Shown here: piece by piece, positions 1,509 to 53,589 of the stretch
Numbering within the stretch: position 1 is the first letter of the stretch
Layout: every line of letters begins with the position of its first letter
Origin: Macrostomum lignano
Taxonomy: Eukaryota
NCBI GenBank assembly: GCA_002269645.1
Contig: NIVC01000514.1
Location: 1-64,000 of the forward strand
Direction of reading: 5' to 3'
Length of the DNA: 64,000 bases
The notes under the pieces: model-generated
The model's database searches: none
What the model saw: the letters and a program-made list of their open reading frames with translations, nothing else
What the model was told of the DNA's origin: nothing
Made by a program: the position numbers and the translations under genes

Positions 1509-1714
1509 TGTAGGGTTGCGTTTGGTTTGGGCCGTCGGGGGGGGGCTGCTCTATTAGTATATGTACTTGCATCTCGCTTTCTTCTCTGTACATGCCCACC
1601 ACCCCAGTTGGGTGAGTCACTTTAATCGATCTATCATCGCTGACTATTTAATCGCTCGTAAATTATCGTGCATCAAAATATACTTCGTAAACTTACTCTA
1701 AATTCTCTCTTACA
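1509..1714 (+). repeat. 5' LTR (206 bp)
   Basis: Matches 5386-5594 except for 2 substitutions in the G-run and a short difference near the 3' end. Confidence 0.95.
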
Positions 1715-1748
1715 TTGGTGGCAGCGAGAACCCAGTGCAAGTGCACTC

Positions 1749-2559
1749 ATGGCCCAGAACACCCTTCTACCGCCAAAGTTCAGTGGAACAGACGTGAGAA
1801 AGTGGCTGCGCATCTTTGAGGAATTCGCCAACGATGCGAAATGGGATGACGCGACCTCAGCGTCGAAGGTGAAGCTGCTGCTCACGGGAGAAGCCCAACT
1901 GGTCGTCTATGACCTGGCCGAGACAAGACAAGAGTTTTAAAAGTATAAAGGAGGACCTCACAAAGTTTTATGGAGGCGAAGCGGACAGCTTTAAGGCCAT
2001 GAGCGACTTCTACGCGAAAAAACGTGGAGATGCCGAGACACTGCGTGAGCTCTGCTTTAACCTGAAGCTGCTACACCAGAAAGCCAGACCGGAGGACTCA
2101 ATTGTTCAGCGAGACCGAGATGTGCGCTTCAAGCTTCTGAAGCTGCTCAAGGCCGAAATTCGTGACAACCTGCTTAAGGCAGAGGTCGCAGAGACCCCCA
2201 GCCTGGAGACTCTGCTGCAGCGGGCGGCTCGGCTGGAGGAGCTGGCTGGGCGACAGTCGGTGGCGGCAGTCGGAGCCGTCAGCGCTACATCATCGGCAGA
2301 ACCAAGCGAGGACCGCCTGGACCGACTGGAGAAACGCATGGAGGAGCTCATCGCGAGGGTCAGCGTACAGTCGGGTACCGACACTCGGCGTCGCCGTCAA
2401 CAGCGAGGAGGCGGCTGCTTCAACTGCGGCCAGCTCGGACACCGTGCAGCGCAATGTCAGCAGCGAGAGAAACAGCCGGGTCCGATCATCTGCCACAAGT
2501 GCTCTGGGCGGGGGCACAAGGCCTCTGTCTGCCCATCGAAGGCTCCGGGAAACTTTTAA
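1749..2559 (+). CDS. gag: gag (one frameshift near 1935)
   Basis: MAQNTLLPPKFSGTDVRKWLRIFEEFA... continues in a shifted frame to CFNCGQLGHRAAQC and CHKCSGRGHKASVC. Confidence 0.85.
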
Positions 2560-2594
2560 GGGTTGGTGCAACGGGTGCGGGCCCACACCAACCC
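2547..2594 (+). promoter_or_regulatory. Probable -1 programmed ribosomal frameshift signal, gag to pol
   Basis: Heptamer G GGA AAC at 2547-2553 in gag phase, 6-nt spacer, then stem GGGTTGGTG (2560-2568) / CACCAACCC (2586-2594). The pol frame is -1. Confidence 0.75.
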
Positions 2595-5277: not shown

Positions 5278-5385
5278 CGTGCTTTATTTCTGATCGGGAC
5301 TTTTTTCGCGTTGCATGAACTTTTTTTTGTTTGCTTTTGTTTTATCCCGTTTTTTATCCCATGTATTTTTCTTGGGGGAGAGTGA

Positions 5386-5594
5386 TGTAGGGTTGCGTTT
5401 GGTTTGGGCCGTCGGGTGAGGGCTGCTCTATTAGTATATGTACTTGCATCTCGCTTTCTTCTCTGTACATGCCCACCACCCCAGTTGGGTGAGTCACTTT
5501 AATCGATCTATCATCGCTGACTATTTAATCGCTCGTAAATTATCGTGCATCAAAATATACTTCGTAAACTTACTCTAAATTCTCGGCTTTTACA
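5386..5594 (+). repeat. 3' LTR (209 bp)
   Basis: Direct repeat of 1509-1714, preceded by the PPT. Confidence 0.95.
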
Positions 5595-6147
5595 AGTTTG
5601 TATTCTGAGCTTCAGTTTGTATTCTGAGGTTCAGTTTGTATTCTGAGCTTCAGTTTGTATTCTGAGCTTCAGTTTGTATTCTGAGCTTCAGTTTGTATTC
5701 TGAGCTTCAGTTTGTATTCTGAGCTTCAGTTTGTATTCTGAGCTTCAGTTTGTATTCTGAGCTTCAGTTTGTATTCTGAGCTTCAGTTTGTATTCTGAGC
5801 TTCAGTTTGTATTCTGAGCTTCAGTTTGTATTCTGAGCTTCAGTTTGTATTCTGAGCTTCAGTTTGTATTCTGAGCTTCAGTTTGTATTCTGAGCTTCAG
5901 TTTGTATTCTGAGCTTCAGTTTGTATTCTGAGCTTCAGTTTGTATTCTGAGCTTCAGTTTGTATTCTGAGCTTCAGTTTGTATTCTGAGCTTCAGTTGGA
6001 ATTCTGAGCTTCAGTTGGGATTCTGAGCTTCAGTTGGGATTCTGAGCTTCAGTTGGGATTCTGAGCTTCAGTTGGGATTCTAAGCTTCAGTTGGGATTCT
6101 GAGCTTCAGTTTGTATTCTGAGCTTCAGCTTCTATTCTGAGCTTCAG
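5595..6147. repeat. 19-bp minisatellite, right part (about 29 units; TTTGTA and TTGGGA variants)
   Basis: Tandem units visible; reverse complement of the array at 16965-17822. Confidence 0.95.
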
Positions 6148-6159
6148 TCGAAATGCACT

Positions 6160-13763: not shown

Positions 13764-14708
13764 TGTAATGCATGCGCCCTTGTCGGTTGGCAGGGCGCGT
13801 TGCACTTTGGGGCTGGCTAGGGGGGGTTGGCGGGCGTGGCAGGGTCTGGCCGGCGGCCGGGCTTTGCGCGTGCTCCTCCCCAGCCGTGCCCCTGGCCCGT
13901 GCTCAGGGCTGGTTGGCTGCGGCCGGGCCAACTTTGGCGCGGGTGCGGCCCCTCCCCCCCTAGGCGGGGTTTTGATTGGCTGGCCGGCGCGGCCAGTCTA
14001 TTTTTGTTGGGGTAGTTTGTTTTGGTGGGCTTAGCCGGTGGGGCCATCGGCTCCAGGGTTTGGTTATTATTTAGTGCGGCTCTGGGTCTTGCTCCTGCCC
14101 TTCGTCCCGGTTTGTGCTGTTTGTGTTTTTCTGTTTTGGTGTGCTCGGAGAGTACAAGTGCAGGACTCGACATATAAACAGCAATACTAGTTATTGAATA
14201 CAGCGAGAAAATAACACAAGAGCCTTAAGAAGAGCTTTGGAGAATTCAGAACCTGCACTGACCAACGAGCAAACCAATAGACGTGAGAACGGCGATTTGG
14301 CCACTGTACAACGAGCGAATCAATAAACGTAACGGCGATTTGGCCACTGGTACGCCGCCTGCTGCTTGAGTTCGTTATTTTCTGGGAGCTTGTTAGGCTG
14401 AGTTCTTGCCAGAGCGTCATAACGCCGGGAGATCATATAGCTTTTTGTAGTACTGTACCGTCTACTCTATTATAGTGTGTACAACCTACAGTATCGAAAC
14501 TAGAAGCACCCGAGAGTGTCACCACACCCCGAGCCGCAGCGTGAACTCTGAGTGTCACAACACCAGAGGGATCGAACTATTATCGCAGAGCGTCGTCACG
14601 CCTGCTCGTATCCATAAAAGTACCGACAGAGCGTCACTACGCCTGTTATATTACGTGTAAAATAATTGTACTCGGGACTGGGTACCCAAACCGACCCGGG
14701 TTACAACA
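13764..14708 (+). mobile_element. Solo LTR (945 bp), family A, copy 1
   Basis: TGTAAT...ACAACA with a perfect 4-bp TSD CGAT (13760-13763, 14709-14712). The 3' ~230 bp are nearly identical to 23197-23428. Confidence 0.85.
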
Positions 14709-15689: not shown

Positions 15690-18600
15690 GAGCATCAGTT
15701 TCTGAGCAGCAATCCCGCGGACAGAAGTTTGTTTACCTACTCGGCCTTCTATGACCGAAGAGACAGCTCCAGACGGCCTGTGGTCCGAGTGGTCGGCATC
15801 GCCTTGGGTGGCCGGGTAGACGGCCAGCTTTGCCAACTGTGGTATCGACGAGATACATCGGCGTGGTATCAGCGGTCGGCGATGGTGGCCGTGCCAGCCA
15901 CTGCGGAGATTGTGCCTGGGGGGCACGCCTGGCCCTACGACTATGTGGTCATCAGCTGCATTAATCCGGCCAGAGATCGGGAGGTACCGTATGGCGTGTC
16001 CTTTGCTAGGTGAGTACACAGATACTGGAATAAACGGATAGGTCACTTGAAAAAATGATTTCATCGATTCTTTCTTCAGTAGCAAAATTAGTTTTTGCCT
16101 TTAGAACAAATATATATATATTTGGTTATTCTGTTGTACAAGATATGTAAAGTTTTGGAAGCTGCAAAAATTGCCTTTCCACAAGCAGACCCATCAAATG
16201 AGCATCAGATCTCTTCTCTGTTGACACTGAGCTCTCGACTGCCCCAATCGGATGCACTGAAACCGAACTGGCGGGATGTTTTGTGGACCTGGCACTAACG
16301 CGAGACCTCTGATCCTCAGGTCTCTCGCTGTCCGTCTTGGTACATTCTAGATCCACCAGCTTCCTAGACGCCTGGTGCAGATAATCGGCGCTCCAAGGCA
16401 GTGTTGGCCCGACGTAGATACCATTTCTCGTAGTTTTCAACCACAAGCTAGCTTGATCAAGGAGTCCGTGTTTGCCTACCTCCGCCATCACACTCCTCCG
16501 CTGCCACAGCTTACTTTTCGGGTCGTGTAGAACCACAATCGAGCCGATTCGGATTCGGTCGAGACTCTTCTTAGACTTGTGGCACTGCTGCATCACTCAC
16601 TGTCTTGTGAATTTCAGATGCGGTCTGCTCAATCTGCTGAATTGTGCTGTGCCATTGGGGGTTACAGCTTCGTCAATGAACAGGGAGGGAATTCCTCCAT
16701 CATCGGATGTCCATACAGAATGATGAAGGGAACAGTATGCCTTTTGCCATCTTTTCCTGTCTATGTCATATTTCGATAGTCCCAGGATCAACTGATATTC
16801 TTTTTTTGGCAGACTTAACTGCAGATTCAGTCCTTCCATTACTTTGGTGATGGTAAGGCGATGAGAATCTGGACTCAATTGACAAAGGCGTTGACTTTGA
16901 ATGGAGGGCCTGAGAACCCGAGTCTGATAGCTCACGGCACGCGTTGATAAACTTGTGAGCCGGAGCTCAGAAGCTCAGAATCCCAACTGAAGCTTAGAAT
17001 ACAAACTGAAGCTCAGAATACAAACTGAAGCTCAGAATCCCAACTGAAGCTCAGAATCCCAACTGAAGCTCAGAATCCCAACTGAAGCTTAGAATCCCAA
17101 CTGAAGCTTAGAATCCCAACTGAAGCTCAGAATAGAAGCTGAAGCTCAGAATACAAACTGAAGCTCAGAATACAAACTGAAGCTCAGAATCCCAACTGAA
17201 GCTCAGAATCCCAACTGAAGCTCAGAATCCCAACTGAAGCTTAGAATCCCAACTGAAGCTTAGAATCCCAACTGAAGCTCAGAATACAAACTGAAGCTCA
17301 GAATCCCAACTGAAGCTCAGAATCCCAACTGAAGCTCAGAATCCCAACTGAAGCTTAGAATCCCAACTGAAGCTTAGAATCCCAACTGAAGCTCAGAATA
17401 CAACTGAAGCTCAGAATACAAACTGAAGCTCAGAATCCCAACTGAAGCTCAGAATCCCAACTGAAGCTCAGAATACAAACTGAAGCTCAGAATCCCAACT
17501 GAAGCTCAGAATCCCAACTGAAGCTCAGAATCCCAACTGAAGCTCAGAATCCCAACTGAAGCTCAGAATACAAACTGAAGCTCAGAATCCCAACTGAAGC
17601 TCAGAATCCCAACTGAAGCTCAGAATACAAACTGAAGCTCAGAATCCCAACTGAAGCTCAGAATCCCAACTGAAGCTCAGAATACAAACTGAAGCTCAGA
17701 ATCCCAACTGAAGCTCAGAATCCCAACTGAAGCTCAGAATACAAACTGAAGCTCAGAATCCCAACTGAAGCTCAGAATCCCAACTGAAGCTCAGAATACA
17801 AACTGAAGCTCAGAACCCCAACTGGTCGCATCTGCCCGCAGGTCGGCCTGTGCTCAGCCCCACGCAGTGCACCCGGTGCTTGCTCTGCCGTCCGAGCCGG
17901 TGCGCAACGGCAGATTCGCTGTGTGCATGTCACCTCTTCAGTCCAAGTACGACAAGGTGGACGAGCTGGTGCAGACGCTGGAACTGAACCGCCTTTTCGG
18001 TGCCGACCATTTCTTTGTGTACAAGCACTCAACGAGCAGGCGAGTGACCGAGCTGCTTTCGAATAAGCACGTGAGTGGCCTTAAACCCTGGTTGTGCTTC
18101 TCAAGTATATACTTTCTGGTGTATAGTTTATGAAAAAAGCATCATCCTATTAGATGTGCGTACAAACATCATCCACCTAGACTTGTCCAACTGGCCATTT
18201 CTTGATTTTAGAGTTGTGAGCCTTCCTCCAGTTCTTAGTATGTATCTTCTTTTCTCGACCCTTGGTGATTTTAATGTGTACATGTATGTATACGTTGTTA
18301 TAAAACCTACCGCGCTGATGATTTGTCATGCCGGCGGCTTGGCGGCTGTCTCCTGGCCGGGTGCCTGAATCCGGCGCCCTATAACGATGGGAAAAGCACT
18401 TATGTACTTGTATCTGTGATTCTGACTCCTCAAAAATAATGTTTCTCTTTGTTTACTCACCTTTTTATTAATATATCTTCACTTACACCAGCCTCATACT
18501 CATATCTCGCCCATTCGCACCTGCAGTTTGCCAGTGACGTCACCGTCCTTCCCTTCCAACCGCCATTGAAAGTAGACGTCGACCCGCAGCCTCCCGGCTA

Positions 18601-19168
18601 CGTTGTAGAATTGAAGTATTTCGGCCAGTGCGCGATGCTGCAGGACTGTCTGATGCGCGCTGCGGCTCAGTACGAGTTCGCGGTTTTCACCGACATGGAC
18701 GAAGTGATTGTTCCGAGAGGAGAGCGGTTTCGCAGCTGGCGGGACCTGACCCGAGCTTTCATGTCGGACGGTAGCATCGGTGGTCTGGCATTTAAGAACG
18801 CATTCTTTCGGCTTGAATGGGCCAGCGATCCCGAGGTCTCGCGTAATGCCACCATCACTGGTCTGAAGCTGAGCGCTCTACTCAAGCTGCGCCGCGAGGC
18901 CGAGATCTATTCGCCGATATCCAGGTCGAAGATGATCGCCCAGCCCCATCATGTCCGCATTCTGGGGGTGCACAATGTGTGGCGCTATTTTAATGGGAGA
19001 AGCACCGAGTACGTTAAATTCGAAACAGCAGGACTGCACCACTACCGCAGGTGGGGCCGGGGTCTGGAGAAAAAGTCCGTGCGGGATCCAGCCATGCTGC
19101 TCTACAAGGAGCAGCTGATTGCCAGGGTGTTGCGAGCCAGGATTGCCCTGCGTCTGCCAGTGCAGTGA
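15690..19168 (+). CDS. Glycosyltransferase family 92 (DUF23/GALT-1-like) gene, copy B; intact over the visible exons
   Basis: Exons 15690-16009, 17842-18070 and 18527-19168 join in frame through GT-AG introns (phase 2, then phase 0). Motifs YSAFYDRR, FAVCMSPL, FTDMDEVIVP, RSKMI, GVHNVW, LHHYR. The N-terminal exon(s) were not located. Confidence 0.85.
16300..16935 (-). mobile_element. Decayed gypsy integrase C-terminal fragment within a GT92 intron
   Basis: SLDRIRIGSIVVLHDPKSKLWQRR..EVG..RN pattern, plus degenerate upstream SP..QSN-like sequence. Confidence 0.45.
16965..17822. repeat. 19-bp minisatellite (CTGAAGCTCAGAATCCCAA / ..ATACAAA), about 45 units
   Basis: Same unit as 1400-1508 and 5595-6147; ends about 20 bp before the acceptor at 17841. 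Confidence 0.95.
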
Positions 19169-19700: not shown

Positions 19701-20660
19701 TTAGTTCAAGTGCACCCTTGCCACCCCAGCATCGGGGATTGGAGTTATCCAAATTAATTTACTTCTCAAATTGACTCTCTCTCACTCTCGGCACCCGCCA
19801 CCCCTAATCTCTGTCTATTACTCGTAATTTATGCTGACTCGAAGAATTCAATTTAAATAAAAACTAAAACAACGCGCACAAGGGTTTAGCGTGTTTTTCC
19901 AACTTCCAATTGCAAATATTCGTCTCTTCTCAGAACCCATAATTTCACACTGTGGGGTCGTACAACGCTCGTATAAAGCTGTCGCAGTAGGCTGGATCGT
20001 ACGTCGGAACTTTACACTGCGGAGAAAGGAGCTAAGAACGATATTATCTTACGATGGCTTTATAGAACGGGCCGTTTCGTAACCGCGTTGCGGTTATGAA
20101 GTCAATAAGTCGCGTTTCTGCCGGAAGCAATGCCCCATTCTCTCGCGAACGTGCATTCGGGACATTTGCTGCCCGATCTGCTTGCTACCTGCGGAACTGC
20201 TGAAGGTACCCGGTGAGCACTTGTAACAGCTTGACGACCCAGTGCGGTTCCATTGGTCTGCAGGACACTGTGGTGTCTGGCCTGTTGAGTGCTCTTGCAC
20301 TTTTTGAGTTGTTTTTGCATGCGCCCAAGGCGGCCATCCCCAGACCAGTTCTGGCTGGTTGGGAGGGGGGCGCTCGGCCCAGCTTGAGTCTTTCCCCGCG
20401 GCGGCCACTGATTGGCTGGGCTTGTGTTTTTGTGTTTTTATTGTCTGGCTCCCAGTCAATCAGATCTGCTCGGCGGGCACGCTGATTGGCTGAGGGGTCG
20501 TCTCTTTTGTTTGGCGTCTCTCTCTCTCTCTCTCGCGCTGTCTGCCCCTCTACCCTGTTAAGTGGTATATAGTGCTCAAGCCTGGCCCAGCCAGCTCCCC
20601 ACTCTCCGCTCCGCGCCCCGTGCCTAGCTCTTCAAACTAACCTAGCGATATTCAAGCGAG

Positions 20661-20761
20661 CCGTAAAGACGGCCTCTTACTGCGAAGACTCTTAATTTTG
20701 CATGCGATACTCAAGCGAGCCGTGTCTATACAGTCTCTTACTGCGAGGACTCAATTGATTG
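20661..20761 (+). other. Two spliced-leader-like sequences inside the LTR
   Basis: 20661-20704 CCGTAAAGACGGCCTCTTACTGCGAAGACTCTTAATTTTGCATG and 20733-20761 GTCTCTTACTGCGAGGACTCAATTGATTG. These match the M. lignano SL as recalled at 38/44 and 27/29, and show the flatworm-type CCGT..ACGG 5' stem and GCATG end. Confidence 0.75.
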
Positions 20762-20987
20762 GGAGCAAATAAAGCGGTCAAGTGGTGGCGATCCTCGAAC
20801 GAGCTCCACAGTTTCTGGCACCGGTAAGACACCCGAGTTCATTCGCTTCTTTAGCTTTTCCGAGGCCTTGCCGTAGCAGTGATTCCATAGCTAGAGCGTC
20901 ATCACGCCTGCGACTGTGACCACTGCAGCACAGCAGCGTTGTATATTGTGTATTATTGTAGTACTGTACCGGTTACTTTATATAGTG

Positions 20988-23192
20988 TGATGTAACCGCC
21001 CTTGTCGCCGGTCCGCTCCTATTGAGAGACGAACGCTTGGCTAGAGGGGGCAATGACCGTAGGCTGCCTATGACCGGGCAATGACCTGACGGACCTCCAG
21101 CACCAGACTGTCCCGCCCACATGATTGATAGCTTTGGTAGCGCTTTGTGACCAGAGGGCCAAAGACCCACATGGACCCCACCTGTAGCCAAGGTGCAATA
21201 GTTGGTCACTCGGTCATGGTATGACAGAGTGGCTGCCACCACTCTATGTGACCTGGCGAACCTGGATCTTTCTAACCAGACCTCTCGAGGCTAGAGCCCC
21301 GCTGGGATGGTTACCAGGAGATTTAGGCTAACAGGGGAGACACATGCAGCCGAGTACAGGGACTCTGCTTGGGGCATGATCGAGAACTCTGGGCTCAATC
21401 TGGAGGATTTTCAGCAGGGGATCCTTTGTGGCTGTGAGCGAGGCTGACTTGCGACTTTGATTACTAAGAGTAGTATGAGGCGAACATGTACTGTCTACAG
21501 TTTAGATTGCTCAGGGCGAAGGGACGCGTCAGCATGGGGTTGCAACCTTCCTACTGCCATTCTGTGCCAAGAGTCGCTAATCCCTCTACTGCACGCACAC
21601 ACGGCCCCGCAGCACGCACTCACAGGCGAGCTTTGCACAGTGAGAGGCCATTAGCTTACCCAAACTTCCCTATGCTTTGCCACCCCAGGAGAAAGGCTTA
21701 GCAAGCCCTGGGTGAAATGATGGTGAAAGAGTGAATCATGATGAGGTTAGTTAATAATTAGGCCCTTAGGCAAATAATCAGGCAATAGGCGGCTTCACTA
21801 TTGAGTAAAAATACAGCAAAAGGTACGGTATCACAACTGGCTCAGCTCTCTAATCAGACAATGGACAAATAGGCAAACTCCGGATAAGCAAAGGCAATTA
21901 GAGCACAAATCAGTAACAGGAACTTACCGGCAGCTGCACAGAGAGAGAGAGAGAGGCGGAGTGACCGAGGGCGGCTGTAGGCTGCAGTCAGGCGGACAGT
22001 GAAGCGGCGATGCGCTGAAGCGACGAGGCGCTGGTGTAGATCAGGCGAAGCTGATGATGCTGGGCGGTGTCAGACCGCTGGCCAATAGGCGAGCTCACTT
22101 AAGGAGCTGAAGATAACTTGGCGGTAACAGACCGCGGACCGGCAGGGATTCGTCTTATAGACGAATGGGTCAGAACTCAGTCTGACGGCAAGTCTAAGGA
22201 AAGACTAGGAGCCCGAAGGTGGGCAAAAGTTGAGCATTCTCATGCCGAAAACCGCCTCCTTTTATAGCCTTCCCAGCCGCCGCTCCAAGGTCGTTTCCAT
22301 GACTCCCTCTCTCTGATTGGCTGCCGGCCGAATGACGTCAGAATGAGTCATGATGAGAAACACGAGACCGGCATAGCAACATGAGAAATAGGGAAATTGC
22401 GCAATCCGGAGGTGGGGTGGGGGGATAATTGGCGCAGCGGGTGGTCGCGAAAGTGTTGCGCAAGCAAACATTGAGAACAATAGGGCTGGGGTCGAGAACA
22501 AAGGAATTGGAAATCGGGGATAATTGGGGAGAATCGAGAACAATAGAAAAGCAAACATTGGAGAAAAGGTGATAATTAGGTGCGAAAACGAGAACAATAG
22601 AAAGAGAAAATCGGAGAAAATGTGATAATTGGTGGGGGTAAAGAGAACAAAAGAATAAAAAACGAGAACAATAGAAGCGGAGGTGGGGTGGGTGTCGCAT
22701 GAGAAATTTGGGGAGGAGAATAATAGCATGAGAAAAGGTTGCACAAGAGAGGGGGATGAGTCATCGATGAGTCATCGAGGGGAAGAAGGGGTCACACGAC
22801 TTGCGTCACCGTTTGGGAGTTTGGGAAGGGATGGGAGGTCGGTGAGCACACAAAATAGACGCAGAGAAAGAGGGGACAGCGCAGTAAAAGAGTGCAGAGA
22901 GAGACAAAAAGAGGGGGAATGGGGAAAGTACAAGAAGACTAGGGTGGAGCGCAGGAGAGATAAGGTAGAGGGGGGGGGGTACAGAGAGGGGTAGGGAGCT
23001 CCGGAAAGGCAGGTGTGGCGGCAGGGGAGACGGAACCAAGGCAGCAGGGGGGTGCAGCAGAGCGGGAGTCTCTAGGCCTGGTCGGAGACCTGGCCGAGTC
23101 TCGACAGCTCTGTGCAGGGGGGTACACGGGATAGGAGGCACTTTCGAAAAAGTTCCCATGCCCTATCCCGCGACCAGAGCGTGGTTACATCA
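20988..23192 (-). mobile_element. Nested 2.2-kb solo LTR (family B)
   Basis: Perfect 10-bp terminal inverted repeat TGATGTAACC/GGTTACATCA, TSD AGTG (20984-20987, 23193-23196). The empty site TATAGTGTGTAC is seen in copy 1. Minus-strand TATAAA at 22261-22266. Confidence 0.85.
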
Positions 23193-26100
23193 AGTGTGTA
23201 CAATCTACAGTATCGAAACTAGAAGCACCCGAGAGTGTCACCACACCTCGAGCCGCAGCGTGAACTCTGAGTGTCACAAACACCAGAGGGATCGAACTAT
23301 TATCGCAGAGCGTCGTCACGCCTGCTCGTATCCATAAAAGTACCGACAGAGCGTCACTACGCCTGTTATATTACGTGTAAAATAATTGTACTCGGGACTG
23401 GGCACCCAAACCGACCCGGGTTACGACAACAATTTGAGCACGAGCTGCTGCCTGAACTGCTGGACTAAGTACCAGCCGAGCAGTCCTGACAGCTTGAAGA
23501 CCCAGCACCGCTCCGCATGCCAGCGGTACAGTTTGATCACGAGCCGGCGCTGATGAACTGTCAGAGTAATTTCAAGCTGCACAATGACTAAAACTTGAAG
23601 ACCTGGTGATACTCCACGAGCCGGCTAAGCAACTACTCAAGCCGTTCTGACTGGAAAAGCTGCCGACAGGGCACGGAATGAAGCCATCTGCTCCTGCAGT
23701 GACTGAGATCGTCCCAACGATGCAACGTTCGCACACAGCAGCTCCCGGTCCGCTCCAGCGAGCGGCAGAACACACGAGCTCGAGCCAATCTTACTGGCAT
23801 CGTACGGACAGAGTGCGGTAGCAACGGAAAAGGTAGCCAGTGAACAGGTCTTCTGTCCCGACTGAGCTTCAGAGTCCTCAAATTTGCAGGGATCGGCGCT
23901 TCCGTCTGACCTGCATTGGGCTGGTGCGAGCGAAGTTCTCCTGGGGCACCGAGTACACACTGAGGTCCGAGAAGCTCCCGCAGCGCACGGCACGCAGTCA
24001 CACGGGCCAGTTTTGCCTCTGAATTCTACCTAATTATGGCCGGACTGAACTCGACCTTCTTGCAGTTTTTTCACAGCTCACTGATCCCTCATCACTCAAG
24101 GAGGGATTGGGGACACGCATTGCAAAGGCTGCTTCCCGAATTTTTCGAGTAAAAACCCACTGAGCACGGTTGGCATTGAGACCGGCCAGTGTTTGTTACT
24201 GAACTGGCCTATGGTACAATGCGTCCGACCAAGGAGGGAAAACGAGCCGGGACTGCATGCTGAACACACACGTTCAAGCTGGTTGCAGTGCCTTCAACGC
24301 ACTTTCACTCGTACTTACGGAGCTGAGTCGGCAGTAAAACACTATGTGCACTCAAATGCCGTCGATGTGCTAAAAGTACAAGGGGAACACAGCTTGCAGT
24401 TTTGGTTTCCTGTTGAGTTCTTGAAGGTGCCAGCTTGACTGGGAAGGGACAGAAACTCTGAATTTTTGCTCATCTTGTAGCCTCTCGGACATTGAGGCAA
24501 AAATCTCACTATTTGCCGCATGCAGAGTTTCTCTGCTTGATCCGCACATTGCGACAATCAAAGCTTTTGGTATCGTCGTGAGCCAGTCGATGCATTCCTT
24601 GTGACAGTCCAGGATGCAGTGCCCATCCAGCAATTACATGTAGTTTGTGCTCAGGCATCCACCCTGGTCAGTCTTATGTCCATCAGAGACTCGGACCTGG
24701 AGCTCACTCCGAATGTGTAGAAAGGCAAGCGGCTGTGCTGGCTGTCCTGTGGGAACTTTTAGTTTGAGTAGACTGTGCCGATGTCGCTGATGGAGCCGGC
24801 CGCCTTCCGAAACTGCATCAGCATCAAGCCTTTGGTCCACGCGTACGCTTCATTGCCTTGTAGTAAACGACGCGCTGCATTTTGAACTGCATAGATACAT
24901 GTAGTACCACGTCATGCGGTCTCTGGCAGCCGTAAATTGAAGGCAATTCTTCTCCTTGCCGGGATCGAGTTAGGCCACTTTAAATTACCTCCAGTGAAAG
25001 GGCGGAACCGGCCGAAACGTCCAGCCTTGGAGCTCTGGCCACGGTGGAGCCAGACAGCCAGACTGGGATTATCGCGGGTTGTGCCACTGAGACGCCAAAT
25101 TCGCACCCATCGATATGCGGAAGAAACCGCTCCTCTCATCGCAGGTGAGGATCGTGATGTTCCAGATGCAGATCTTGGTCTCGACTGGCTTGTAGCTTTC
25201 CAGCTGGCATCCATTGGACAGGCGAGCGCGATGGTGTCCTGGCTCCGTAGAGAACCAAATGACATCGTGTATACTTGACCTGAATCTTCAACAAGTTCGG
25301 AACTGAACTCGATTATATTGTAAGTAAATAAAAGGCGGTCTTTGAGCTCCACAAAACTAAGAGGCCGAGTCCCGTTGCTGAAGATGTTGATCTGAACCAA
25401 AGTAGATCGCTCACAGCCAGACTGACCAGCTTTCAACTTGTGGACTGAGACGGTTTGCTGGGGTGGCCATGCAGCTGCTTGCAACTGCAGTATTTTGCCA
25501 GCGAGATAAGGGCGATCGAGTAGGAATGTATATAGAATGAGCGTGAGTTCCTAATCACTATTGTAGGTAGGCGAAAATGAAGGCAGTCGAGCCGAGCTCA
25601 AAGCTGCTCAACAGATCTCAATGCCAAGTTGGTCTCTGTGAGCCGTCAGCCGTGTCGCAGAGCGCAGAATTTTCCTGCTGTTGGGGCTGCTGCATTTATC
25701 AGGAATTACAAGCGGAAATTTCCGCATTCCCAGCTGCTTGAAAAGTTTTCAAGACTTTTCATACACTGCTTGAACAGCTAATTAGTTGGTCTCGTTTTAA
25801 ATGCCGACTTAATTATTTAGAATTTTTAAAACAAAAGTTTTTTAGCCAGAGAACAATCGCTGCGTTGCCAATGTATATGATATCCAGACTATAAATTATA
25901 TTTGAGAGCCTTCATGCTGCTGCGAGCTACAACAGATGAGCTGACTTCCTCAACATCTAGCCTGCAATCTTCCACACGTTTAACCAACGATATACAATTC
26001 GTTGATCAAGCAACCATTCGTTGATCCAATTAGGCTGCTACAGCAACAGGCAACGCTGTCGCAGCTTCAGTATGCAAATTTCAACTTCACAAGACCGCTG

Positions 26101-26747
26101 CATCGGTATCACAAAGGTACAGTGGCGCACAGTATACAGAGGGGGCGCACAAATAATCTCTCCCACAAAAATTGCCCCACCATGAAAAGTGCATGCTCAT
26201 CAAAGACGGACAGGAACTTAACTTTTGCCACCCATTAAACGGGGCGCACACCTACACGTGGGATGTTGGGGCGCCAGCCACGACAGCAAATAGCTACATG
26301 TACGAGTGTTGCAGCTGCTCTAATACGAGTACATGTTAAATTCCTGCGTATGCCACTGCTAGGATACATGTGGGGGTCGAAGCTAACGCGTACAAATGTA
26401 GAAGCAGCCCATGTATGCTCGTACATGTACATGTATAAGCAGAGCTCCAGCTTGACCCTGATTTCTGTAACTACTGTATCCGAACGCAATTTCACACATT
26501 GTGTTTAGTTGACCCTGCGATGCGGGCTGGCTTGTGCCAAAGCAAATCAATCGCCTTTGAAGTGAAAAGCAAGAAACTCAAAAGCTCTGACTGAAATTCG
26601 CCGATGAAAGTCACGAAACGGCTTGTCACCGCTTTACTGTATTGCATGCAGCTCGGATCGAGAGGTCCAACAAGTTAACAAGACAGAAATTCTCTGTGAC
26701 AAAATGCGCATGGAAACCCAGGATAGTAAATATTTGGCATTTATTTA

Positions 26748-28466
26748 GCTCAGGCTTGGCGAACCTGGCCTGCACCCACACTCTGAGCATCCCCAGGCCA
26801 CTCTAATCCTCAGGCTTGGCGTACTTGGCCTGCACCCACACTCTGAGCATCCCCAGGCCAATCTAATCCTCAGGCTTACCGCACCTGGCCTGCACCCACA
26901 CTCTGAGCATCCCCAGGCCACTCTAATCCTCAGGCTTGGCGTACTTGGCCTGCACCCACACTCTGAGCATCCCCAGGCCAATCTAATCCTCAGGCTTGGC
27001 GTACTTGGCCTGCATCCACACTCTGAGCATCCCCAGGCCACTCTAATCCTCAGGCTTGGCGTACTTGGCCTGCACCCACACTCTGAGCATCCCCAGGCTA
27101 CTCTAATCCTCAGGCTTGGCGTACTTGGCCTGCACCCACACTCTGAGCATCCCCAGGCCACTCTAATCCTCAGGCTTGGCGTACTTGGCCTGCACCCACA
27201 CTCTGAGCATCCCCAGGCCACTCTAATCCTCAGGCTTGGCGTACTTGGCCTGCACCCACACTCTGAGCATCCCCAGGCCACTCTAATCCTCGGGCTTGGC
27301 GTACTTGGCCTGCACCCACACTCTGAGCATCCCCAGGCCAATCTAATCCTTAGGCTTGGCGTACTTGGCCTGCACCCACACTCTGAGCATCCCCAGGCTA
27401 CTCTAATCCTCAGGCTTGGCGTTCTTGACCTGCACCCACACTCTGAGCATCCCCAGGCCACTCTAATCCTCAGGCTTGGCGTACTTGGCCTGCACCCACA
27501 CTCTGAGCATCCCCAGGCCACTCTAATCCTCAGGCTTGGCGTTCTTGACCTGCACCCACACTCTGAGCATCCCCAGGCCAATCTAATCCTCAGGCTTGGC
27601 GTTCTTGACCTGCACCCACACTCTGAGCATCCCCAGGCCAATCTAATCCTCAGGCTTGGCGTTCTTGGCCTGCACCCACACTCTGAGCATCCCCAGGCCA
27701 ATCTAATCCTCAGGCTTACCGCACCTGGCCTGCACCCACACTCTGAGCGTCCCCAGGCCACTCTAATCCTCAGGCTTGGCGTACTTGGCCTGCACCCACA
27801 CTCTGAGCATCCCCAGGCCAATCTAATCCTCAGGCTTACCGCACCAGGCCTGCACCCACACTCTGAGCATCCCCAGGCCACTCTAATCCTCAGGCTTGGC
27901 GTTCTTGACCTGCACCCACACTCTGAGCATCCCCAGGCCAATCTAATCCTCAGGCTTGGCGTTCTTGACCTGCACCCACACTCTGAGCATCCCCAGGCCA
28001 ATCTAATCCTCAGGCTTACCGCACCTGGCCTGCACCCACACTCTGAGCATCCCCAGGCCACTCTAATCCTCAGGCTTGGCGTACTTGGCCTGCACCCACA
28101 CTCTGAGCATCCCCAGGCCAATCTACTCCTCAGGCTTACCGCACCTGGCCTGCACTCACACTCTGAGCATCCCCAGGCTACTCTAATCCTCAGGCTTGGC
28201 GTACTTGGCCTGCACCCACACTCTGAGCATCCCCAGGCCACTCTAATCCTCAGGCTTGGCGTACTTGGCCTGCACCCACACTCTGAGCATCCCCAGGCCA
28301 ATCTAATCCTCAGGCTTGGCGTACTTGGCCTGCACCCACACTCTGAGCATCCCCAGGCCACTCTAATCCTCAGGCTTGGCGTACTTGGCCTGCACCCACA
28401 CTCTGAGCATCCCCAGGCCAATCTAATCCTCAGGCTTGGCGTACTTGGCCTGCACCCACACTCTGA
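26748..28466 (-). repeat. 60-bp tandem array (about 28.6 units) made of the METTL2 C-terminal codons plus stop
   Basis: The unit translates to MLRVWVQAKYAKPED*SGLG; the first unit is the true gene end. Confidence 0.95.
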
Positions 28467-28900
28467 ACATCTTCAGCTGCCTGGCCCGGTTCACAATCAG
28501 CCGCCTGTCTGTCAGCAGCTGCCGCCGGACAAGGCCGGCCTCCTCCCCGAACAGGCGGTGGCAGTCGGGCTCGCTGAAGAAGTACACCCGGGTGCCGTCG
28601 CCCCTGGCGTACAGGTGGTCGGCGATGCACCGCCCCGCCGGCAGCCGGGTCTGCGCGAGGTCCAGCCGGCCGTAGTCGCGGAACAGCAGAGAGCCGCCTG
28701 GCCGCAGGAGAGGCGTCAGGCGGCTGACTGCGGCGGACATTTGATCTGGCGGCATGGCGGATAGCACGAAGACCAGCAGCACCGCGTCCAGCGAGCCCGG
28801 CTGCAGCTGCGGCGTCACTGAGGCCGGTAGCTCCTCGTTGGCGACGTCCCAGACGAAGGGAACGCATCTAGGTGGGCAGAGACGAGAGGGGATCTGCACT

Positions 28901-28986
<86 letters not shown>

Positions 28987-30890
28987 GTCAGTCAGAGGCA
29001 GGCAGGCAGGCAGGCAGGCAGACAGACAGACAGACAGACAGGTTCCATGAAAGATCTGGGATCTGGGTGACGGGAGGCCAAATGAGCAAGGTTCGGCCTG
29101 CTGGAACGCGCCCGTTTCCTTGCAGAAGTTAGCAGACATCCGGTATTCCGGTGACTGCCCAGCCAGAAAGCAACTGCGCAAAGCGAATCAGAGAAGCCGA
29201 GTTTTTAATGGGCTAAAATAAATTTCTAAACGAAGACCAGCAGGCAGCAGCCTGAACTCGCCTGTCGTCCCGCTGGCACTCTGGCGACTCGGCCAGCAGC
29301 TGGACCGCCCGCGGCGAAAAGTCGCAGGCAAAGAGGCGCTGCAAGCCGCGGCCACCGCTGGCGCCTGCTGCATCCTCGGCAGAGGCGGCCGCGGCCTGCA
29401 GCAGCGGTAGCGCGGAGTTGCCGGCACCGCAGCCGACTTCCAGGACGCGGCCAGCTGTGCGCAACTCGTCGAACTCGGTGAGCAGCCAGTGCCGGTCCTT
29501 GAAGAACCGGTCGCGGTGCAGCGAGTAGAACCTGCGGTGGCGGGTCAGCAGTCATAAAAGCATTGAAAATCGGTAGTCGTGTTGTGGGGCGATTCTCATT
29601 GGGACTGCGGCGATTCTCAATGGGGCTGAGGCGATTCTCATTGGGGCTGAGGCGATTCTCAATGGGGCTGAGGCGATTCTCAATGGGGTGAGGCGATTCT
29701 CATTGGGACTGAGGCGATTCTCATTGGGGCTGAGGCGATTCTCATTGGGACTGCAGCGATTCTCATTGGGGCTGAGGCGATTCTCAATGGGGCTGAGGCG
29801 ATTCTCATAGGGACTGCAGCGATTCTCAATGGGGCTGCAGCGATTCTCATTGGGGCTGAGGCGATTCTCAATGGGGCTGAGGCGATTCTCATAGGGACTG
29901 CAGCGATTCTCAATGGGGCTGCGGCGATTCTCATTGTGGCTGAGGCGATTCTCATAGGGACTGCTGCGATTCTCATTGGGACTGCGACGATTCTCATTGG
30001 GGCTGTGGCGATTCTCAATGGGGCTGAGGCGATTCTCAATGGGGCTGAGGCGATTCTCATTGGGGCTGCGGCGATTCTCATTGGGGCTGAGGCGATTCTC
30101 ATTGGGACTGCGGCGATTCTCATTGGGACTGAGGCGATTCTCATTGGGGCTGAGGCGATTCTCATTGGGGCTGAGGCGATTCTCAATGGGGCTGAGGCGA
30201 TTCTCAATGGGGCTGAGGCGATTCTCAATGGGGCTGTGGCGATTCTCAATGGGGCTGTGGCGATTCTCAATGGGGCTGTGGCGATTCTCATTGGGGCTGA
30301 GGCGATTCTCATTGGGGCTGAGGCGATTCTCAATGGGGCTGAGGCGATTCTCAATGGGGCTGTGGCGATTCTCAATGGGGCTGTGGCGATTCTCATTGGG
30401 GCTGAGGCGATTCTCATTGGGGCTGAGGCGATTCTCATTGGGGCTGAGGCGATTCTCATTGGGGCTGAGGCGATTCTCATTGGGACTGAGGCGATTCTCA
30501 TTGGGGCTGAGGCGATTCTCATTGGGGCTGAGGCGATTCTCATTGGGGCTGAGGCGATTCTCATTGGGGCTGTGGCGATTCTTGAAGTTGGGAGCCTCAA
30601 GACCGATAGCCCAAGAAAGGACGGCAGCTGCCTCACTTGTCCCAGTTGCTAGCCGCTTCTTCGTCCAGCTTCTGCGCCTCATCGGCCGGCATCTTCTGAG
30701 CCGCCTTGGCCTCGACCGAAGCGGCCAGGGCCGCCTCCTCAGCCGGGCTGCAGGCCGCGTTGTCCCAGGCGTTCTGCTCGAACACGCGCGACTCGTCCGT
30801 GAGGAAGCGGCCGCCGAAGCCGCTCGGCCGGCTGCCGCACGCGGCCGCGACCGCCTCTGATTGAGCAGCCGGCGATGGGGTGGTGGGGTT
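28423..30890 (-). CDS. METTL2: tRNA N3-methylcytidine methyltransferase METTL2 homologue
   Basis: Exons 30890-30637 (FGGRFLTDESRVFEQNAWDN), 29531-29262 (FFKDRHWLLTEFDEL..VLEVGCGAGN..FACDFSPRAV) and 28867-28423 (FVLSA..LLFRDYGRLDLAQ..YARGDGTRVYFF..DRRLIVNR..MFRVWVQAKY). No ATG was found for the first exon; intron 2 is GC-AG. Confidence 0.9.
28902..29041. repeat. (GACA)n microsatellite in METTL2 intron 2
   Basis: Direct observation. Confidence 0.95.
29587..30580. repeat. 21-bp minisatellite (GAGGCGATTCTCATTGGGGCT), about 47 units, in METTL2 intron 1
   Basis: Direct observation; it explains the SPNENRL/APMRIAS repeat ORFs. Confidence 0.95.
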
Positions 30891-30939
30891 CTGGAGGGAG
30901 AGGGGAAGGAGGTTGAAAGTGTGCAAGGCTGGCTGCCTA

Positions 30940-31320
30940 GCAACTGAGGATCTGGAAGGCTGGCCCAGCAACTGAGAATCTAAGAGGGTAGCCCAGCAAC
31001 TGGGGATTTGGAAGGCTGGCTCAGCAACTACTGGGAATTTGGAAGGCTGGCTCAGCAACTGGGGATCTGGGAGGCTGGCCCAGCAACTGAGAATCTAAGA
31101 GGGTAGCCCAGCAACTGGGGATTTGGAAGGCTGGCTCAGCAACTACTGGGAATTTGGAAGGCTGGCTCAGCAACTGGGGATCTGGGAGGCTGGCCCAGCA
31201 ACTGAGAATCTAAGAGGGTAGCCCAGCAACTGGGGATTTGGAAGGCTGGCTCAGCAACTACTGGGAATTTGGAAGGCTGGCTCAGCAACTGGGGATTTGG
31301 AAGGCTGGCTCAGCAACTGG
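30940..31320. repeat. Compound repeat (CAGCAACTGGGGATTTGGAAGGCTGGCT-based, higher-order period about 120 bp)
   Basis: Sequence lines 30961/31081/31201 and 31021/31141/31261 repeat. Confidence 0.85.
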
Positions 31321-32031: not shown

Positions 32032-44955
<12,924 letters not shown>

Positions 44956-50617: not shown

Positions 50618-50900
50618 GATAATCCTGGTGGCAGCTACCAACCTAAGAAGAACACTGAAGAGATTAGTAAATTAGCCCTGTGATAGCTTTTGGTGACAGT
50701 GTGAAATTATTATTAAGAAGAAATAATCACCCCTGGTACAACTTGGTGGCATAACGGTGGAATTCTTATAGAGAGCCAGAAGGCCTGTAACAACTTAGTG
50801 TCTCAGCGGTGGGATTCTCAGTGTATAGGAATCACCACTGTAACAACTTTGGTACCAGCAGTGGGATAACTAAAGAGGGAAGCAAACCCCCTGTAGCAAT
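50618..50900 (+). repeat. Array of TGTAACA + tRNA-Leu PBS-like motifs with variable spacers, 52-54 bp period
   Basis: PBS-like starts at 50626, 50691, 50744, 50796 and 50850; CCTG/CACTG-TAACAACT leaders at 50677, 50732, 50784, 50836 and 50890. Confidence 0.6.
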
Positions 50901-53194: not shown

Positions 53195-53580
53195 CCCAAG
53201 ATAGCAAGCATCCCACCAGATAGCAAGCATCCCCCCAGATAGCAAGTATCTATCTAGATAGTAAACACCCCCCCCCTCCCCAAATACCAACCATCCTCCC
53301 GGATAGCAAGCATTCCCCCAGATAGCAAGCATCCCCTAGATAGCAAGCATCCACCCAGATAGCAAGCATCCACCCAGATAGCAAGCATCCACCCAGATAG
53401 CAAGCATCCCCCCAGATAGCAAGCATCTACCCAGATAGCAAGCATCCCCCAAGATAGCAAGCATCCACCCAGATAGCAAGCATCTATCCAGATAGCAAGT
53501 ATTCTGCAGATAGCAAGCATCCACCCAGATAGCAAGCATCTATCCAGATAGCAAGTATTCTGCAGATAGCAAGCATCCCT
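53195..53580. repeat. 19-20-bp minisatellite (CCAGATAGCAAGCATCC(A/C)C); inverted homologue of 62305-62790
   Basis: Direct observation; about 90 bp of flanking sequence is also homologous. Confidence 0.9.
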
Positions 53581-53589
53581 GGATAGAAA

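What the first reader, a model, noticed from the sequence alone, without database searches (positions are those of the whole stretch)
20640..20775. An LTR carrying two copies of the host spliced leader in its R region
Seen: between the LTR TATA (20566) and its AATAAA (20768) is a tandem duplication, each half starting GCGATA(T/C)TCAAGCGAG. Copy 1 (20661-20704) is CCGTAAAGACGGCCTCTTACTGCGAAGACTCTTAATTTTGCATG; copy 2 contains GTCTCTTACTGCGAGGACTCAATTGATTG. Knowledge (from memory, to verify): the M. lignano SL is CCGTAAAGACGGTCTCTTACTGCGAAGACTCAATTTATTGCATG, and flatworm SLs share a CCGT..ACGG 5' stem and end in ATG. The matches are 38/44 and 27/29, and together the two copies rebuild almost the whole SL. 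No GT donor follows, so this is not an SL RNA gene. The sister LTR at 13764-14708 lacks it. Inference: a retrotransposon lineage captured the SL, for example by reverse-transcribing a trans-spliced genomic RNA during strand transfer, and its transcripts now carry SL-like sequence near both ends. This could be SL mimicry affecting translation, stability or silencing, or a source of antisense SL small RNAs. I know of no description of SL-bearing LTRs.
Basis: partly seen in the sequence, partly recalled or inferred. Interest (0 to 1): 0.85.

Follow-up and report, generated by a model that had tools for sequence, protein, structure and literature searches.

The report
Decayed spliced-leader copies inside a solo LTR
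A dead retrotransposon end (solo LTR) in the flatworm Macrostomum lignano carries two decayed tandem copies of the host's spliced-leader sequence, most likely a fossil of a retroelement RNA that picked up the leader before being copied back into DNA; similar cases have already been reported in passing in parasitic flatworms.

Summary
Window 20646-20765 holds two tandem units. Each is a 15-nt prefix (CGATAyTCAAGCGAG) followed by a decayed copy of the Macrostomum spliced leader (SL), which I verified against published SL sequences. The window is M. lignano. The block lies in sense orientation between a TATA-like box and an AATAAA. It sits in a ~950-nt LTR-like repeat with TG..CA ends and 4-bp target duplications, split by a 2.2-kb nested LTR-like insertion. 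It is not an SL RNA gene: no donor follows either copy and there is no Sm site or hairpins.

The rest does not align, so "lacks the block" is misleading.

The most likely explanation is a fossil of SL acquisition by a retroelement RNA, written into R by reverse transcription and then duplicated. The junction anatomy (AG|prefix upstream, SL-ATG|prefix internally) fits this. Nothing supports a present function: the predicted RNA is no more structured than shuffled sequence, and this copy is dead.

The decisive test, a genome-wide count of copies with and without the block, could not be run with these tools.

This is not the first description. A 2025 study found 597 SL-bearing loci associated with LTR and LINE elements in parasitic flatworms and proposed the same origin. 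Interest is modest.

The parts
20269..20987 (+). LTR2, 5' part of a solo-LTR-like repeat (putative U3, R and start of U5). Begins TGTGGTG.
   Evidence: Left flank ...GGACAC|TGTGGTG. The antisense translation in M. lignano protein P0001 stops matching exactly at this end. Motifs shared with LTR1: GCATGCGCCC, GATTGGCTGG, AGAGCGTCnnnACGCC.
20566..20573 (+). TATA-like box (TATATAGT), the putative LTR promoter.
   Evidence: Read directly. Function is inferred only.
20646..20660 (+). P1, a 15-nt prefix (CGATATTCAAGCGAG). It is preceded by ..ACTAACCTAG, so an AG lies directly upstream.
20661..20704 (+). S1, SL copy 1. It is 44 nt, keeps the 5' CCGT..ACGG stem and ends in ATG.
   Evidence: 38/44 ungapped to the published 44-mer. 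It folds like the canonical SL.
20705..20719 (+). P2, the second copy of the prefix (CGATACTCAAGCGAG). It is joined directly to the ATG of S1.
   Evidence: It differs from P1 at 1 nt.
20720..20765 (+). S2, SL copy 2. It is 46 nt. The core is 30/32 identical to the SL, while the 5' stem and terminal CATG have decayed.
20768..20773 (+). AATAAA, the putative polyadenylation signal marking the end of R.
   Evidence: Read directly. LTR1 has CAATAAAC in the corresponding part of its sequence.
20823..20833 (+). GGTAAGACACC, a donor-like site. It is identical to the exon-intron junction of a genuine Macrostomum-type SL RNA gene (L004).
   Evidence: 2 of 500 shuffles reach the score. It matches the M. 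lignano cis-donor motif GT[G/A]AG. No similarity continues into the rest of the intron. Significance is unresolved.
20988..23192 (+). Nested 2.2-kb LTR-like insertion that splits LTR2. It has a TGATGTAACC...GGTTACATCA 10-bp inverted terminal repeat. The target duplication AGTG is at 20984-20987 and 23193-23196.
   Evidence: LTR1 supplies the empty site (TATAGTGTGTACAA). Its first 22 nt resemble the start of LTR1 (82%).
23193..23428 (+). LTR2, 3' part (end of U5). It ends GGGTTACGACA and the right flank starts ACAA.
   Evidence: 97.9% identical to LTR1 14474-14708.
13764..14708 (+). LTR1, a related solo LTR (TGTAATG...GGGTTACAACA) with a perfect 4-bp target duplication, CGAT. It has no SL and carries its own ~46-nt tandem duplication around its AATAAA (about 14263-14352).

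Best explanation
The block is a molecular fossil. It consists of two decayed, exon-only copies of the Macrostomum spliced leader that became part of the leader (putative R) of an LTR retroelement lineage through an RNA intermediate.

The proposed path has four steps, all inferred:
1. Element RNA acquired the SL. This happened either by trans-splicing at an AG in its own 5' leader (the site now seen as ..CTAACCTAG|CGATAT..) or by reverse transcriptase switching onto an SL-capped RNA.
2. Reverse transcription wrote the SL into the LTR.
3. The 59-nt unit (prefix plus SL) became tandem. One route is ordinary slippage. The other is a second round in which minus-strand strong-stop DNA, ending in SL complement, annealed to the SL copy already present in the 3' R. 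That route yields exactly prefix-SL-prefix-SL.
4. The copy in this window is a dead end. It is a solo LTR, later split by another LTR-like insertion, and is decaying.

I see no sign that the block does anything now.
For: Shown:
- Both copies derive from the SL far beyond chance, judged against published SL sequences.
- The host is M. lignano.
- The carrier has LTR hallmarks: TG..CA ends and 4-bp target duplications at LTR1 (perfect), at the nested element (perfect) and at LTR2 (3/4). An independent M. lignano copy shares the same 5' boundary.
- The SL is in the sense of the TATA-to-AATAAA axis.
- Only the exon part of the SL RNA is present. No donor, Sm site or hairpins follow, as expected for a spliced product.
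- The internal junction is SL-ATG|CGATAC, while the first prefix copy is preceded by AG|CGATAT. That is the anatomy of a trans-splice product next to its acceptor.
- No poly(A) tail or target duplication flanks the block itself, which argues against a separate later retro-insertion.
- The two units differ by about 20%. The 236-nt 3' module of this LTR differs by only 2.1% from that of the independently inserted LTR1. Most decay of the block therefore probably predates this insertion.
- LTR1 also has a tandem duplication in the same part of the LTR, so this region is prone to such rearrangements.

Precedent: 597 SL-bearing loci associated with LTR and LINE elements in parasitic flatworms were given the same interpretation (PMC12582326).
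Against: - No second SL-bearing copy was found, and no genome-wide DNA search was possible.
- Two protein-level searches with all reading frames of the LTR and of the block found no translation of the block in M. lignano gene models.
- No full-length element is in the window. There is no gag-pol, PBS or PPT between or next to these LTRs, so 'LTR' and 'R' rest on termini, target duplications and signal motifs.
- The SL starts about 95 nt after the TATA box, so it is not at the predicted transcription start.
- The AG in front of P1 is TAG, not the common [T/C]TNCAG trans-splice acceptor motif.
- A non-homologous SL tail on strong-stop DNA is not easily extended in the textbook strand-transfer scheme, so the first capture needs an unusual event.
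- The dating argument fails if the 98% module identity comes from gene conversion between the two nearby LTRs.
Confidence: 0.55

Rival explanations
1. One-off, post-insertion event. After this LTR copy had integrated, a short SL-containing cDNA or SL-RNA pseudogene fragment was pasted into it (repair-mediated or template-switch insertion) and then duplicated locally. The lineage never propagated it.
For: No other SL-bearing copy was seen in anything I could reach. LTR1 and the nested LTR-like element have no SL. The copy is old and rearranged.
Against: - The block is in sense orientation and placed between the TATA box and the AATAAA.
- No target duplication or A-tail flanks it.
- About 20% divergence between the units, against 2.1% in the LTR's 3' module, suggests the duplication is older than the insertion.
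- The absence of other copies is absence of data, not of copies.
Confidence: 0.22
2. DNA-level or unspliced-RNA capture of an SL RNA gene. The LTR picked up part of an SL RNA gene or of the unspliced SL RNA. GGTAAGACACC at 20823 would be the remnant of its exon-intron junction.
For: GGTAAGACACC is identical to the junction of the genuine SL RNA gene in L004, and only 2 of 500 shuffles reach this score. In the real SL RNA this stretch pairs with GGTCTCTTAC of the SL.
Against: - The 11-mer is separated from S2 by 57 nt that resemble LTR1 sequence by eye (AATAAA..GGCGAT..GGCAC).
- LTR1 has GGTACGCCGCC at about the same place, so the GGTA looks older than the SL capture.
- Seven of the 11 nt are simply the donor consensus.
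- No further intron, Sm-site or hairpin similarity follows.
- The upstream flank of the L004 gene does not resemble the prefix.
Confidence: 0.1
3. Functional SL mimicry. LTR-driven transcripts carry an SL-like leader followed by a donor, so that cis-spliced or element mRNAs resemble trans-spliced host mRNAs in translation, stability or escape from silencing. Alternatively, antisense transcription yields SL-directed small RNAs.
For: The layout of promoter-like box, SL-like sequence and consensus donor (20566, 20661-20765, 20823) would permit it. Solo LTRs that act as promoters and splice to former trans-splice acceptors are known in Echinococcus (PMC4558846).
Against: - Both SL copies are decayed, and in different places, which is not the pattern of a conserved functional sequence.
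- The SL is internal, not at the RNA 5' end, so it could not carry the SL's trimethylguanosine cap context.
- There is no structure signal.
- This copy is interrupted and lies antisense in decayed host repeats.
- No expression data were available.
Confidence: 0.06
4. Chance resemblance or low-complexity artefact.
For: None.
Against: Two adjacent matches against 0.01 expected, with 0 of 100 shuffles reaching two. S1 matches 38/44 and the S2 core 30/32 to a verified SL.
Confidence: 0.01

Closest known systems
SL-bearing loci associated with LTR and LINE elements in parasitic flatworm genomes (PMC12582326, Mol Biol Evol 2025)
   Same: These are partial SL exon sequences without other SL-RNA features, lying in or next to LTR and LINE elements of Platyhelminthes. 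[quoted passage not shown]
   Different: They were reported only as discarded false positives (597 loci) in cestodes and trematodes, with no anatomy given. Here the case is in a free-living macrostomid, inside the putative R of a solo LTR, as a tandem pair with a repeated 15-nt prefix and a junction that looks like acceptor versus product.
Relict SL tandem repeats from mRNA recycling in dinoflagellates (Slamovits and Keeling 2008, as described in PMC3229502)
   Same: Genomic, DNA-encoded SL copies arise by reverse transcription of trans-spliced RNAs. Copies lie in tandem and the more 3' copy is more decayed.
   Different: In dinoflagellates the relicts are directly adjacent and truncated at an AG inside the SL, and they sit at the 5' ends of retroposed host genes. 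Here both copies are full length, are separated by a repeated 15-nt prefix, and lie inside a transposable-element LTR.
Genuine Macrostomum SL RNA gene (109 nt in M. lignano, PMC8629364; example L004:615-723 from a JGI metagenome)
   Same: The same 44-nt exon sequence.
   Different: The real gene has GTAAG directly after the ATG, then two hairpins and an Sm-like site. Its fold has z = -3.46, with 0 of 200 shuffles as stable. The window copies have none of these features.
Site-specific non-LTR retrotransposons of SL RNA genes (SLACS, CZAR and CRE in trypanosomatids, NeSL-1 in nematodes). This is from my own knowledge and was not checked here.
   Same: A physical association between a retroelement and SL sequence.
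   Different: Those elements insert into SL RNA genes, so SL sequence flanks them. Here the SL sequence lies inside the element's terminal repeat, and the carrier is LTR-like, not a non-LTR element.
ta-TRIM solo LTRs of Echinococcus acting as promoters that splice to former trans-splice acceptors (PMC4558846)
   Same: A flatworm solo LTR with a promoter and a chance donor, interacting with the SL trans-splicing system.
   Different: The Echinococcus LTRs compete with the SL but do not contain it. No transcription data exist for the LTR here.

Membership tests
SL RNA gene | SL exon sequence at the 5' end of the unit | tested here: met
   S1 matches 38/44 and the S2 core 30/32 to the published SL, but both copies are decayed.
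SL RNA gene | 5' splice donor (GTAAG) immediately after the SL's terminal ATG | tested here: not met
   S1 is followed by CGATAC and S2 by CAAATA. The genuine gene L004 has ATG|GTAAGACACC.
SL RNA gene | Downstream hairpins flanking an Sm-like site, giving a three-hairpin fold | tested here: not met
   There is no similarity to the L004 intron beyond an 11-mer 57 nt away. The fold of 20600-20850 has z = +1.41, against z = -3.46 for L004. The Rfam result is uninformative, because the positive control L004 is also not detected.
LTR of an LTR retrotransposon | TG...CA termini with short inverted ends | tested here: met
   LTR2 is TGTGGTG...TTACGACA, LTR1 is TGTAATG...TTACAACA, and the nested element is TGATGTAACC...GGTTACATCA.
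LTR of an LTR retrotransposon | 4-6 bp target-site duplication | tested here: met
   LTR1 has CGAT/CGAT and the nested element AGTG/AGTG, with LTR1 providing the empty site. LTR2 has ACAC/ACAA, only 3 of 4.
LTR of an LTR retrotransposon | Occurs as a pair flanking an internal region with PBS, PPT and gag-pol | tested here: not met
   Between and around the copies there is no gag or pol, only GT92 exons and a 19-bp satellite. Both copies have their own target duplications, so they are solo LTRs. The cognate internal region is unknown.
LTR of an LTR retrotransposon | Repeated at other, non-allelic places in the genome | tested here: inconclusive
   One independent copy of the first ~165 nt is embedded in M. 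lignano gene model A0A1I8HKT0, with the same boundary. The 3' module is shared with LTR1. No genome-wide count was possible.
Retroposed relic of a trans-spliced RNA (SL relic) | Exon-only SL joined to sequence that elsewhere follows a splice acceptor AG | tested here: inconclusive
   S1-ATG|CGATAC corresponds to ..CCTAG|CGATAT 59 nt upstream. However, TAG is not the common [T/C]TNCAG acceptor motif, and a simple tandem duplication gives the same picture.
Retroposed relic of a trans-spliced RNA (SL relic) | Evidence that the carrier's transcripts are SL trans-spliced | not testable with these tools
   Needs RNA-seq or SL-read tracks of M. lignano.

The most novel reading that the evidence does not exclude
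An active LTR family of M. lignano may repeatedly recycle the host SL through its R region. Its RNA would be SL trans-spliced at AG|CGATA, and SL-to-SL homology would guide strand transfer, adding a unit each time. The resulting leader (SL-like sequence followed by GGTAAGACACC, the same junction sequence as the SL RNA) would work as an SL-RNA mimic. It would then either donate an SL-like exon or give element mRNAs the translational or silencing-escape properties of trans-spliced host mRNAs.
Probability: 0.04. Interest if true: 0.85.

Novelty: new member of a known kind. Interest (0 to 1): 0.33.

Why it matters
If the block proves to be shared by many copies, it would show two things. First, that LTR-retroelement RNAs in a flatworm are substrates of SL trans-splicing. 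Second, that such processed RNAs can still complete reverse transcription and integration, leaving a datable tag in R. That would be a convenient natural marker for studying strand transfer and retroelement RNA processing in a transgenic model flatworm.

There is also a practical point. Such relics are a source of false SL RNA gene calls and of mis-mapped SL-containing reads. An earlier 'SL RNA' of M. lignano was later reassigned to the 5' end of a trans-spliced protein-coding gene (PMC8629364). As it stands, this is one decayed copy of a phenomenon already noted in other flatworms.

Tried and rejected
- **Rfam:** no hits at gathering threshold on the whole window or in E-value mode on the LTR. 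The control on the genuine SL RNA gene L004 was also negative, so Rfam cannot judge this.
- **Copy census through proteins:** a chimeric query of all open frames of LTR2 and a cleaner one of the six frames across the SL block gave only one M. lignano gene model, which carries the U3 start (P0001). Nothing covered the block. P0001 has no DNA on record.
- **Exact look-up:** ten window ORFs were not in the collection.
- **Third protein search:** the flanking GT92 and Cys-rich exons were used to reach homeologous loci. Only paralogues at 89% or lower came back, and only one had DNA.
- **M. lignano DNA fetched:** L006 (36 kb, homeolog of window 47.8-62 kb) and L007 (24 kb) contain no LTR1, LTR2 or SL sequence.
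- **Collection scans:**
  - The metagenome scan with the SL core gave SL-capped transcripts and one genuine SL RNA gene, but no LTR.
  - One viral-contig scan gave nothing.
  - The other gave a single hit, which I did not inspect and take to be chance.
- **Supplements:** those of the M. lignano LTR and SL papers are not held, and Wasik et al. 2015 is not held.
- **Coding reading of the block:** rejected, because all six frames are full of stops.
- **LTR1 plus LTR2 as the two ends of one element:** rejected. They have different target duplications, unalignable 5' parts and no gag-pol between them.
- **Structured-RNA reading:** rejected.
Full report

Yes. Window 20646-20765 reads as two tandem units. 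Each unit is a 15-nt prefix followed by a spliced-leader (SL) copy.
- P1 is CGATATTCAAGCGAG (20646-20660).
- S1 is CCGTAAAGACGGCCTCTTACTGCGAAGACTCTTAATTTTGCATG (20661-20704).
- P2 is CGATACTCAAGCGAG (20705-20719).
- S2 is CCGTGTCTATACAGTCTCTTACTGCGAGGACTCAATTGATTGGGAG (20720-20765).

- PMC8629364 gives the M. lignano 35-mer CGGTCTCTTACTGCGAAGACTCAATTTATTGCATG.
- Table S3 of PMC10468722 gives the longer form GCCGTAAAGACGGTCTCTTACTGCGAAGACTCAATTTATTGCATG for M. cliftonense, and the same sequence as a 43-mer for M. hystrix.

S1 matches the 44-mer at 38/44 without gaps, or at 41 positions with two 2-nt indels. The S2 core matches 30/32. The 19-nt SL core with up to three mismatches occurs only at these two adjacent sites in 64 kb, against 0.01 expected. 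The TATA-like box at 20566 and the AATAAA at 20768 are present. Neither SL copy is followed by GT.

**2. Whose genome is this?**

It is M. lignano. A CPSF4-like exon at 56386-57303 is 99% identical to NCBI protein BOX15_Mlig010436g1 of M. lignano. A homeologous contig of assembly GCA_002269645.1 aligns to window 47.8-62 kb at 80-96%. So "host SL" is justified.

**3. What carries the block?**

Self-comparison, a global alignment and the junction read-out give the following anatomy.

- **LTR1 (13764-14708)** runs TGTAATG...GGGTTACAACA and is flanked by a perfect 4-bp duplication, CGAT. It is a solo LTR.
- **LTR2, the carrier of the block,** is 20269-20987 plus 23193-23428. It runs TGTGGTG...GGGTTACGACA and is flanked by ACAC/ACAA.
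- **A nested 2.2-kb element (20988-23192)** splits LTR2. It has a 10-bp inverted terminal repeat (TGATGTAACC/GGTTACATCA) and the target duplication AGTG. LTR1 provides the matching empty site.

The 5' boundary of LTR2 is confirmed independently. M. lignano gene model A0A1I8HKT0 (P0001) contains an antisense translation of LTR2 20269-20432, and the similarity stops exactly at 20269.

Nothing between LTR1 and LTR2 is retroviral. That interval holds GT92 exons and a 19-bp satellite. The two LTRs also have different target duplications, so they are independent solo LTRs and not the two ends of one element.

LTR1 and LTR2 share only their last ~270 nt. That comprises 236 nt at 97.9% identity plus 38 nt at 87%. 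The first ~680 nt do not align, reaching about 40% identity in a forced alignment, although they carry the same short motifs. LTR1 does have its own ~46-nt tandem duplication around its AATAAA, so this part of these LTRs is prone to duplication.

**4. What the block is not**

- **Not coding.** Stop codons occur in all six frames.
- **Not an SL RNA gene.**
  - A metagenome scan with the SL core recovered a genuine Macrostomum-type SL RNA gene, L004:615-723.
  - That gene has ATG|GTAAGACACC, two further hairpins and a U-rich Sm-like site.
  - Its fold is far more stable than shuffles (z = -3.46).
  - The window copies have no adjacent donor and no similarity to that intron apart from one 11-mer.
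- **Not a structured RNA.** The region 20600-20850 folds no better than shuffled sequence (z = +1.41).
- **Rfam cannot decide.** It also fails to detect the true gene in L004.

**5. Most likely origin**

The block contains only the exon part of the SL RNA. It is in sense orientation relative to the LTR's TATA-to-AATAAA axis, and it has no A-tail or target duplication of its own. That points to an RNA-mediated origin within the element's own transcript rather than a separate insertion.

The junctions fit a trans-splicing fossil. The first prefix copy is preceded by AG (..ACTAACCTAG|CGATAT), whereas the second is joined directly to the SL's terminal ATG (..GCATG|CGATAC).

This suggests a model. 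An element RNA already carrying one SL copy downstream of the prefix is trans-spliced again at AG|prefix. Its strong-stop cDNA then ends in SL complement and can anneal to the older SL copy in the 3' R. Extension from there yields prefix-SL-prefix-SL, which is what is observed. Simple slippage gives the same product, so this step is inference.

Three points weaken the model.
- TAG is not the common [T/C]TNCAG acceptor motif of M. lignano.
- The uneven divergence between the units (prefix 1/15 versus SL at least 9 substitutions plus 3 indels, counted by eye) is not significant.
- The SL starts about 95 nt after the TATA box, so it is not at the predicted transcription start.

There is also an age argument. 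The two units differ by about 20%. LTR2's 3' module differs from that of the independently inserted LTR1 by only 2.1%. Most decay of the block is therefore probably older than this insertion, which would mean the source element already carried it. Gene conversion between the two nearby LTRs would void this argument.

**6. Function**

I found no evidence for any. Both SL copies are decayed at different positions. The SL-like sequence would be internal to any transcript. The RNA shows no structure signal. This particular copy is a solo LTR broken by a nested insertion. It lies antisense among weak, sub-threshold Ephrin_rec_like cysteine-rich repeats on the minus strand.

One detail remains unexplained. 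GGTAAGACACC at 20823-20833, 57 nt after S2, is identical to the exon-intron junction of the L004 SL RNA gene. Only 2 of 500 shuffles reach that score. In the real SL RNA this stretch pairs with the SL's GGTCTCTTAC. Three things argue that it is mostly donor consensus plus chance.
- Seven of the 11 nt are the donor consensus (GT[G/A]AG).
- LTR1 has GGTACGCCGCC at about the same place.
- The 57 intervening nucleotides resemble LTR1 sequence by eye.

The M. lignano SL RNA gene sequence would settle this.

**7. The decisive test could not be run**

None of the DNA collections holds the M. lignano genome for pattern or similarity search. I tried several indirect routes.
- Two protein-level searches with all frames of the LTR and of the block found no translated copy of the block.
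- A third search, with the flanking genes, gave no homeologous locus with DNA.
- The 60 kb of other M. lignano DNA that I could fetch has no related sequence.

This is absence of data, not evidence of absence.

**8. Comparison with what is known**

The claim that SL-bearing LTRs are undescribed does not hold.
- PMC12582326 (2025) found that 597 of its candidate SL loci in cestodes and trematodes were associated mainly with LTR and LINE elements and carried only partial leader sequence. [quoted passage not shown]
- Tandem relict SLs produced by reverse transcription of trans-spliced RNAs are classic in dinoflagellates.
- The recent survey of 137 M. lignano LTR-RT families does not mention SL.

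What is new here is the anatomy. The SL lies in the putative R of an LTR in a free-living flatworm, as a tandem pair with a repeated prefix and an acceptor-versus-product junction.

**9. Verdict**

- I rate it a new member of a known kind, with modest interest (0.33).
- The most novel reading that the evidence does not exclude is an active family that recycles the SL and mimics the SL RNA. I give it about 4%.

Noticed in passing
window 13764-14708 versus 20269-20987 plus 23193-23428: The two solo LTRs are modular. Their last 236 nt are 97.9% identical, but the first ~680 nt do not align. This suggests recombinant LTR subfamilies (template switching between co-packaged RNAs) or gene conversion between LTRs 6 kb apart.
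   Followed up: partly
window 14263-14352: LTR1 has its own ~46-nt tandem duplication (CAACGAGC...GGCCACTGTAC) spanning its polyadenylation signal. The first unit has CAATAGAC and the second CAATAAAC.
   Followed up: partly
window 20988-23192: A 2.2-kb LTR-like insertion with a 10-bp inverted terminal repeat and the target duplication AGTG. Its first 22 nt resemble the start of LTR1. It contains a long purine-rich stretch (about 22400-23000), a CCAAT-like GATTGGCTG and a TGACGTCA site.
   Followed up: partly
window 20823-20833: GGTAAGACACC is identical to the exon-intron junction of the genuine SL RNA gene found in L004. It lies 57 nt downstream of SL copy 2 and is unexplained.
   Followed up: partly
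L004:615-723 (JGI metagenome contig Ga0302322_100095745): A complete Macrostomum-type SL RNA gene with a three-hairpin fold, next to an intronless ORF that I judged by eye to be Na/K-ATPase beta-like (no domain search run). The SL exon is 100% identical to that of M. lignano, M. cliftonense and M. hystrix. Rfam 15 has no model that detects it. L001 and L002 (Ga0316592) are SL-capped transcripts from a metatranscriptome.
   Followed up: partly
window 1509-5584: A Ty3/gypsy element with 206-bp LTRs (TGTAGGG...CTCTTACA), the PBS-like TGGTGGCAGCGAG, and frameshifted gag (zinc knuckle), protease, RNase H and integrase. No RT domain was detected. It sits inside a 19-bp satellite (1392-1512 and 5595-6148), which recurs inverted at 16832-17815.
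   Followed up: partly
window 17867-19168 (+) and 535-923 (-): Glycosyltransferase family 92 exons. The best match is only 89% to annotated M. lignano GT92 proteins, so this is probably a pseudogene or an unannotated paralogue. A diverged inverted fragment lies at 535-923.
   Followed up: partly
window 20097-20267 and 23575-24557, minus strand: Cysteine-rich repeats (C..C.PG.F....G...C) on both sides of LTR2, with weak Ephrin_rec_like hits below Pfam's cut-off. LTR2 appears to have inserted antisense into a decayed repeat-containing host gene.
   Followed up: partly
window 34074-36929: A non-LTR retrotransposon remnant with endonuclease/exonuclease/phosphatase and reverse transcriptase domains.
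   Followed up: no
window 26629-28608, 29552-30943, 39368-41112, 59917-62240; AT-rich block 46000-54000: Long tandem arrays with periods of 60, 21, 21 and about 23 bp. One is read as an ORF of IRDQDCR repeats. There is also an 8-kb AT-rich block (31-34% GC) in an otherwise 45-60% GC window.
   Followed up: no
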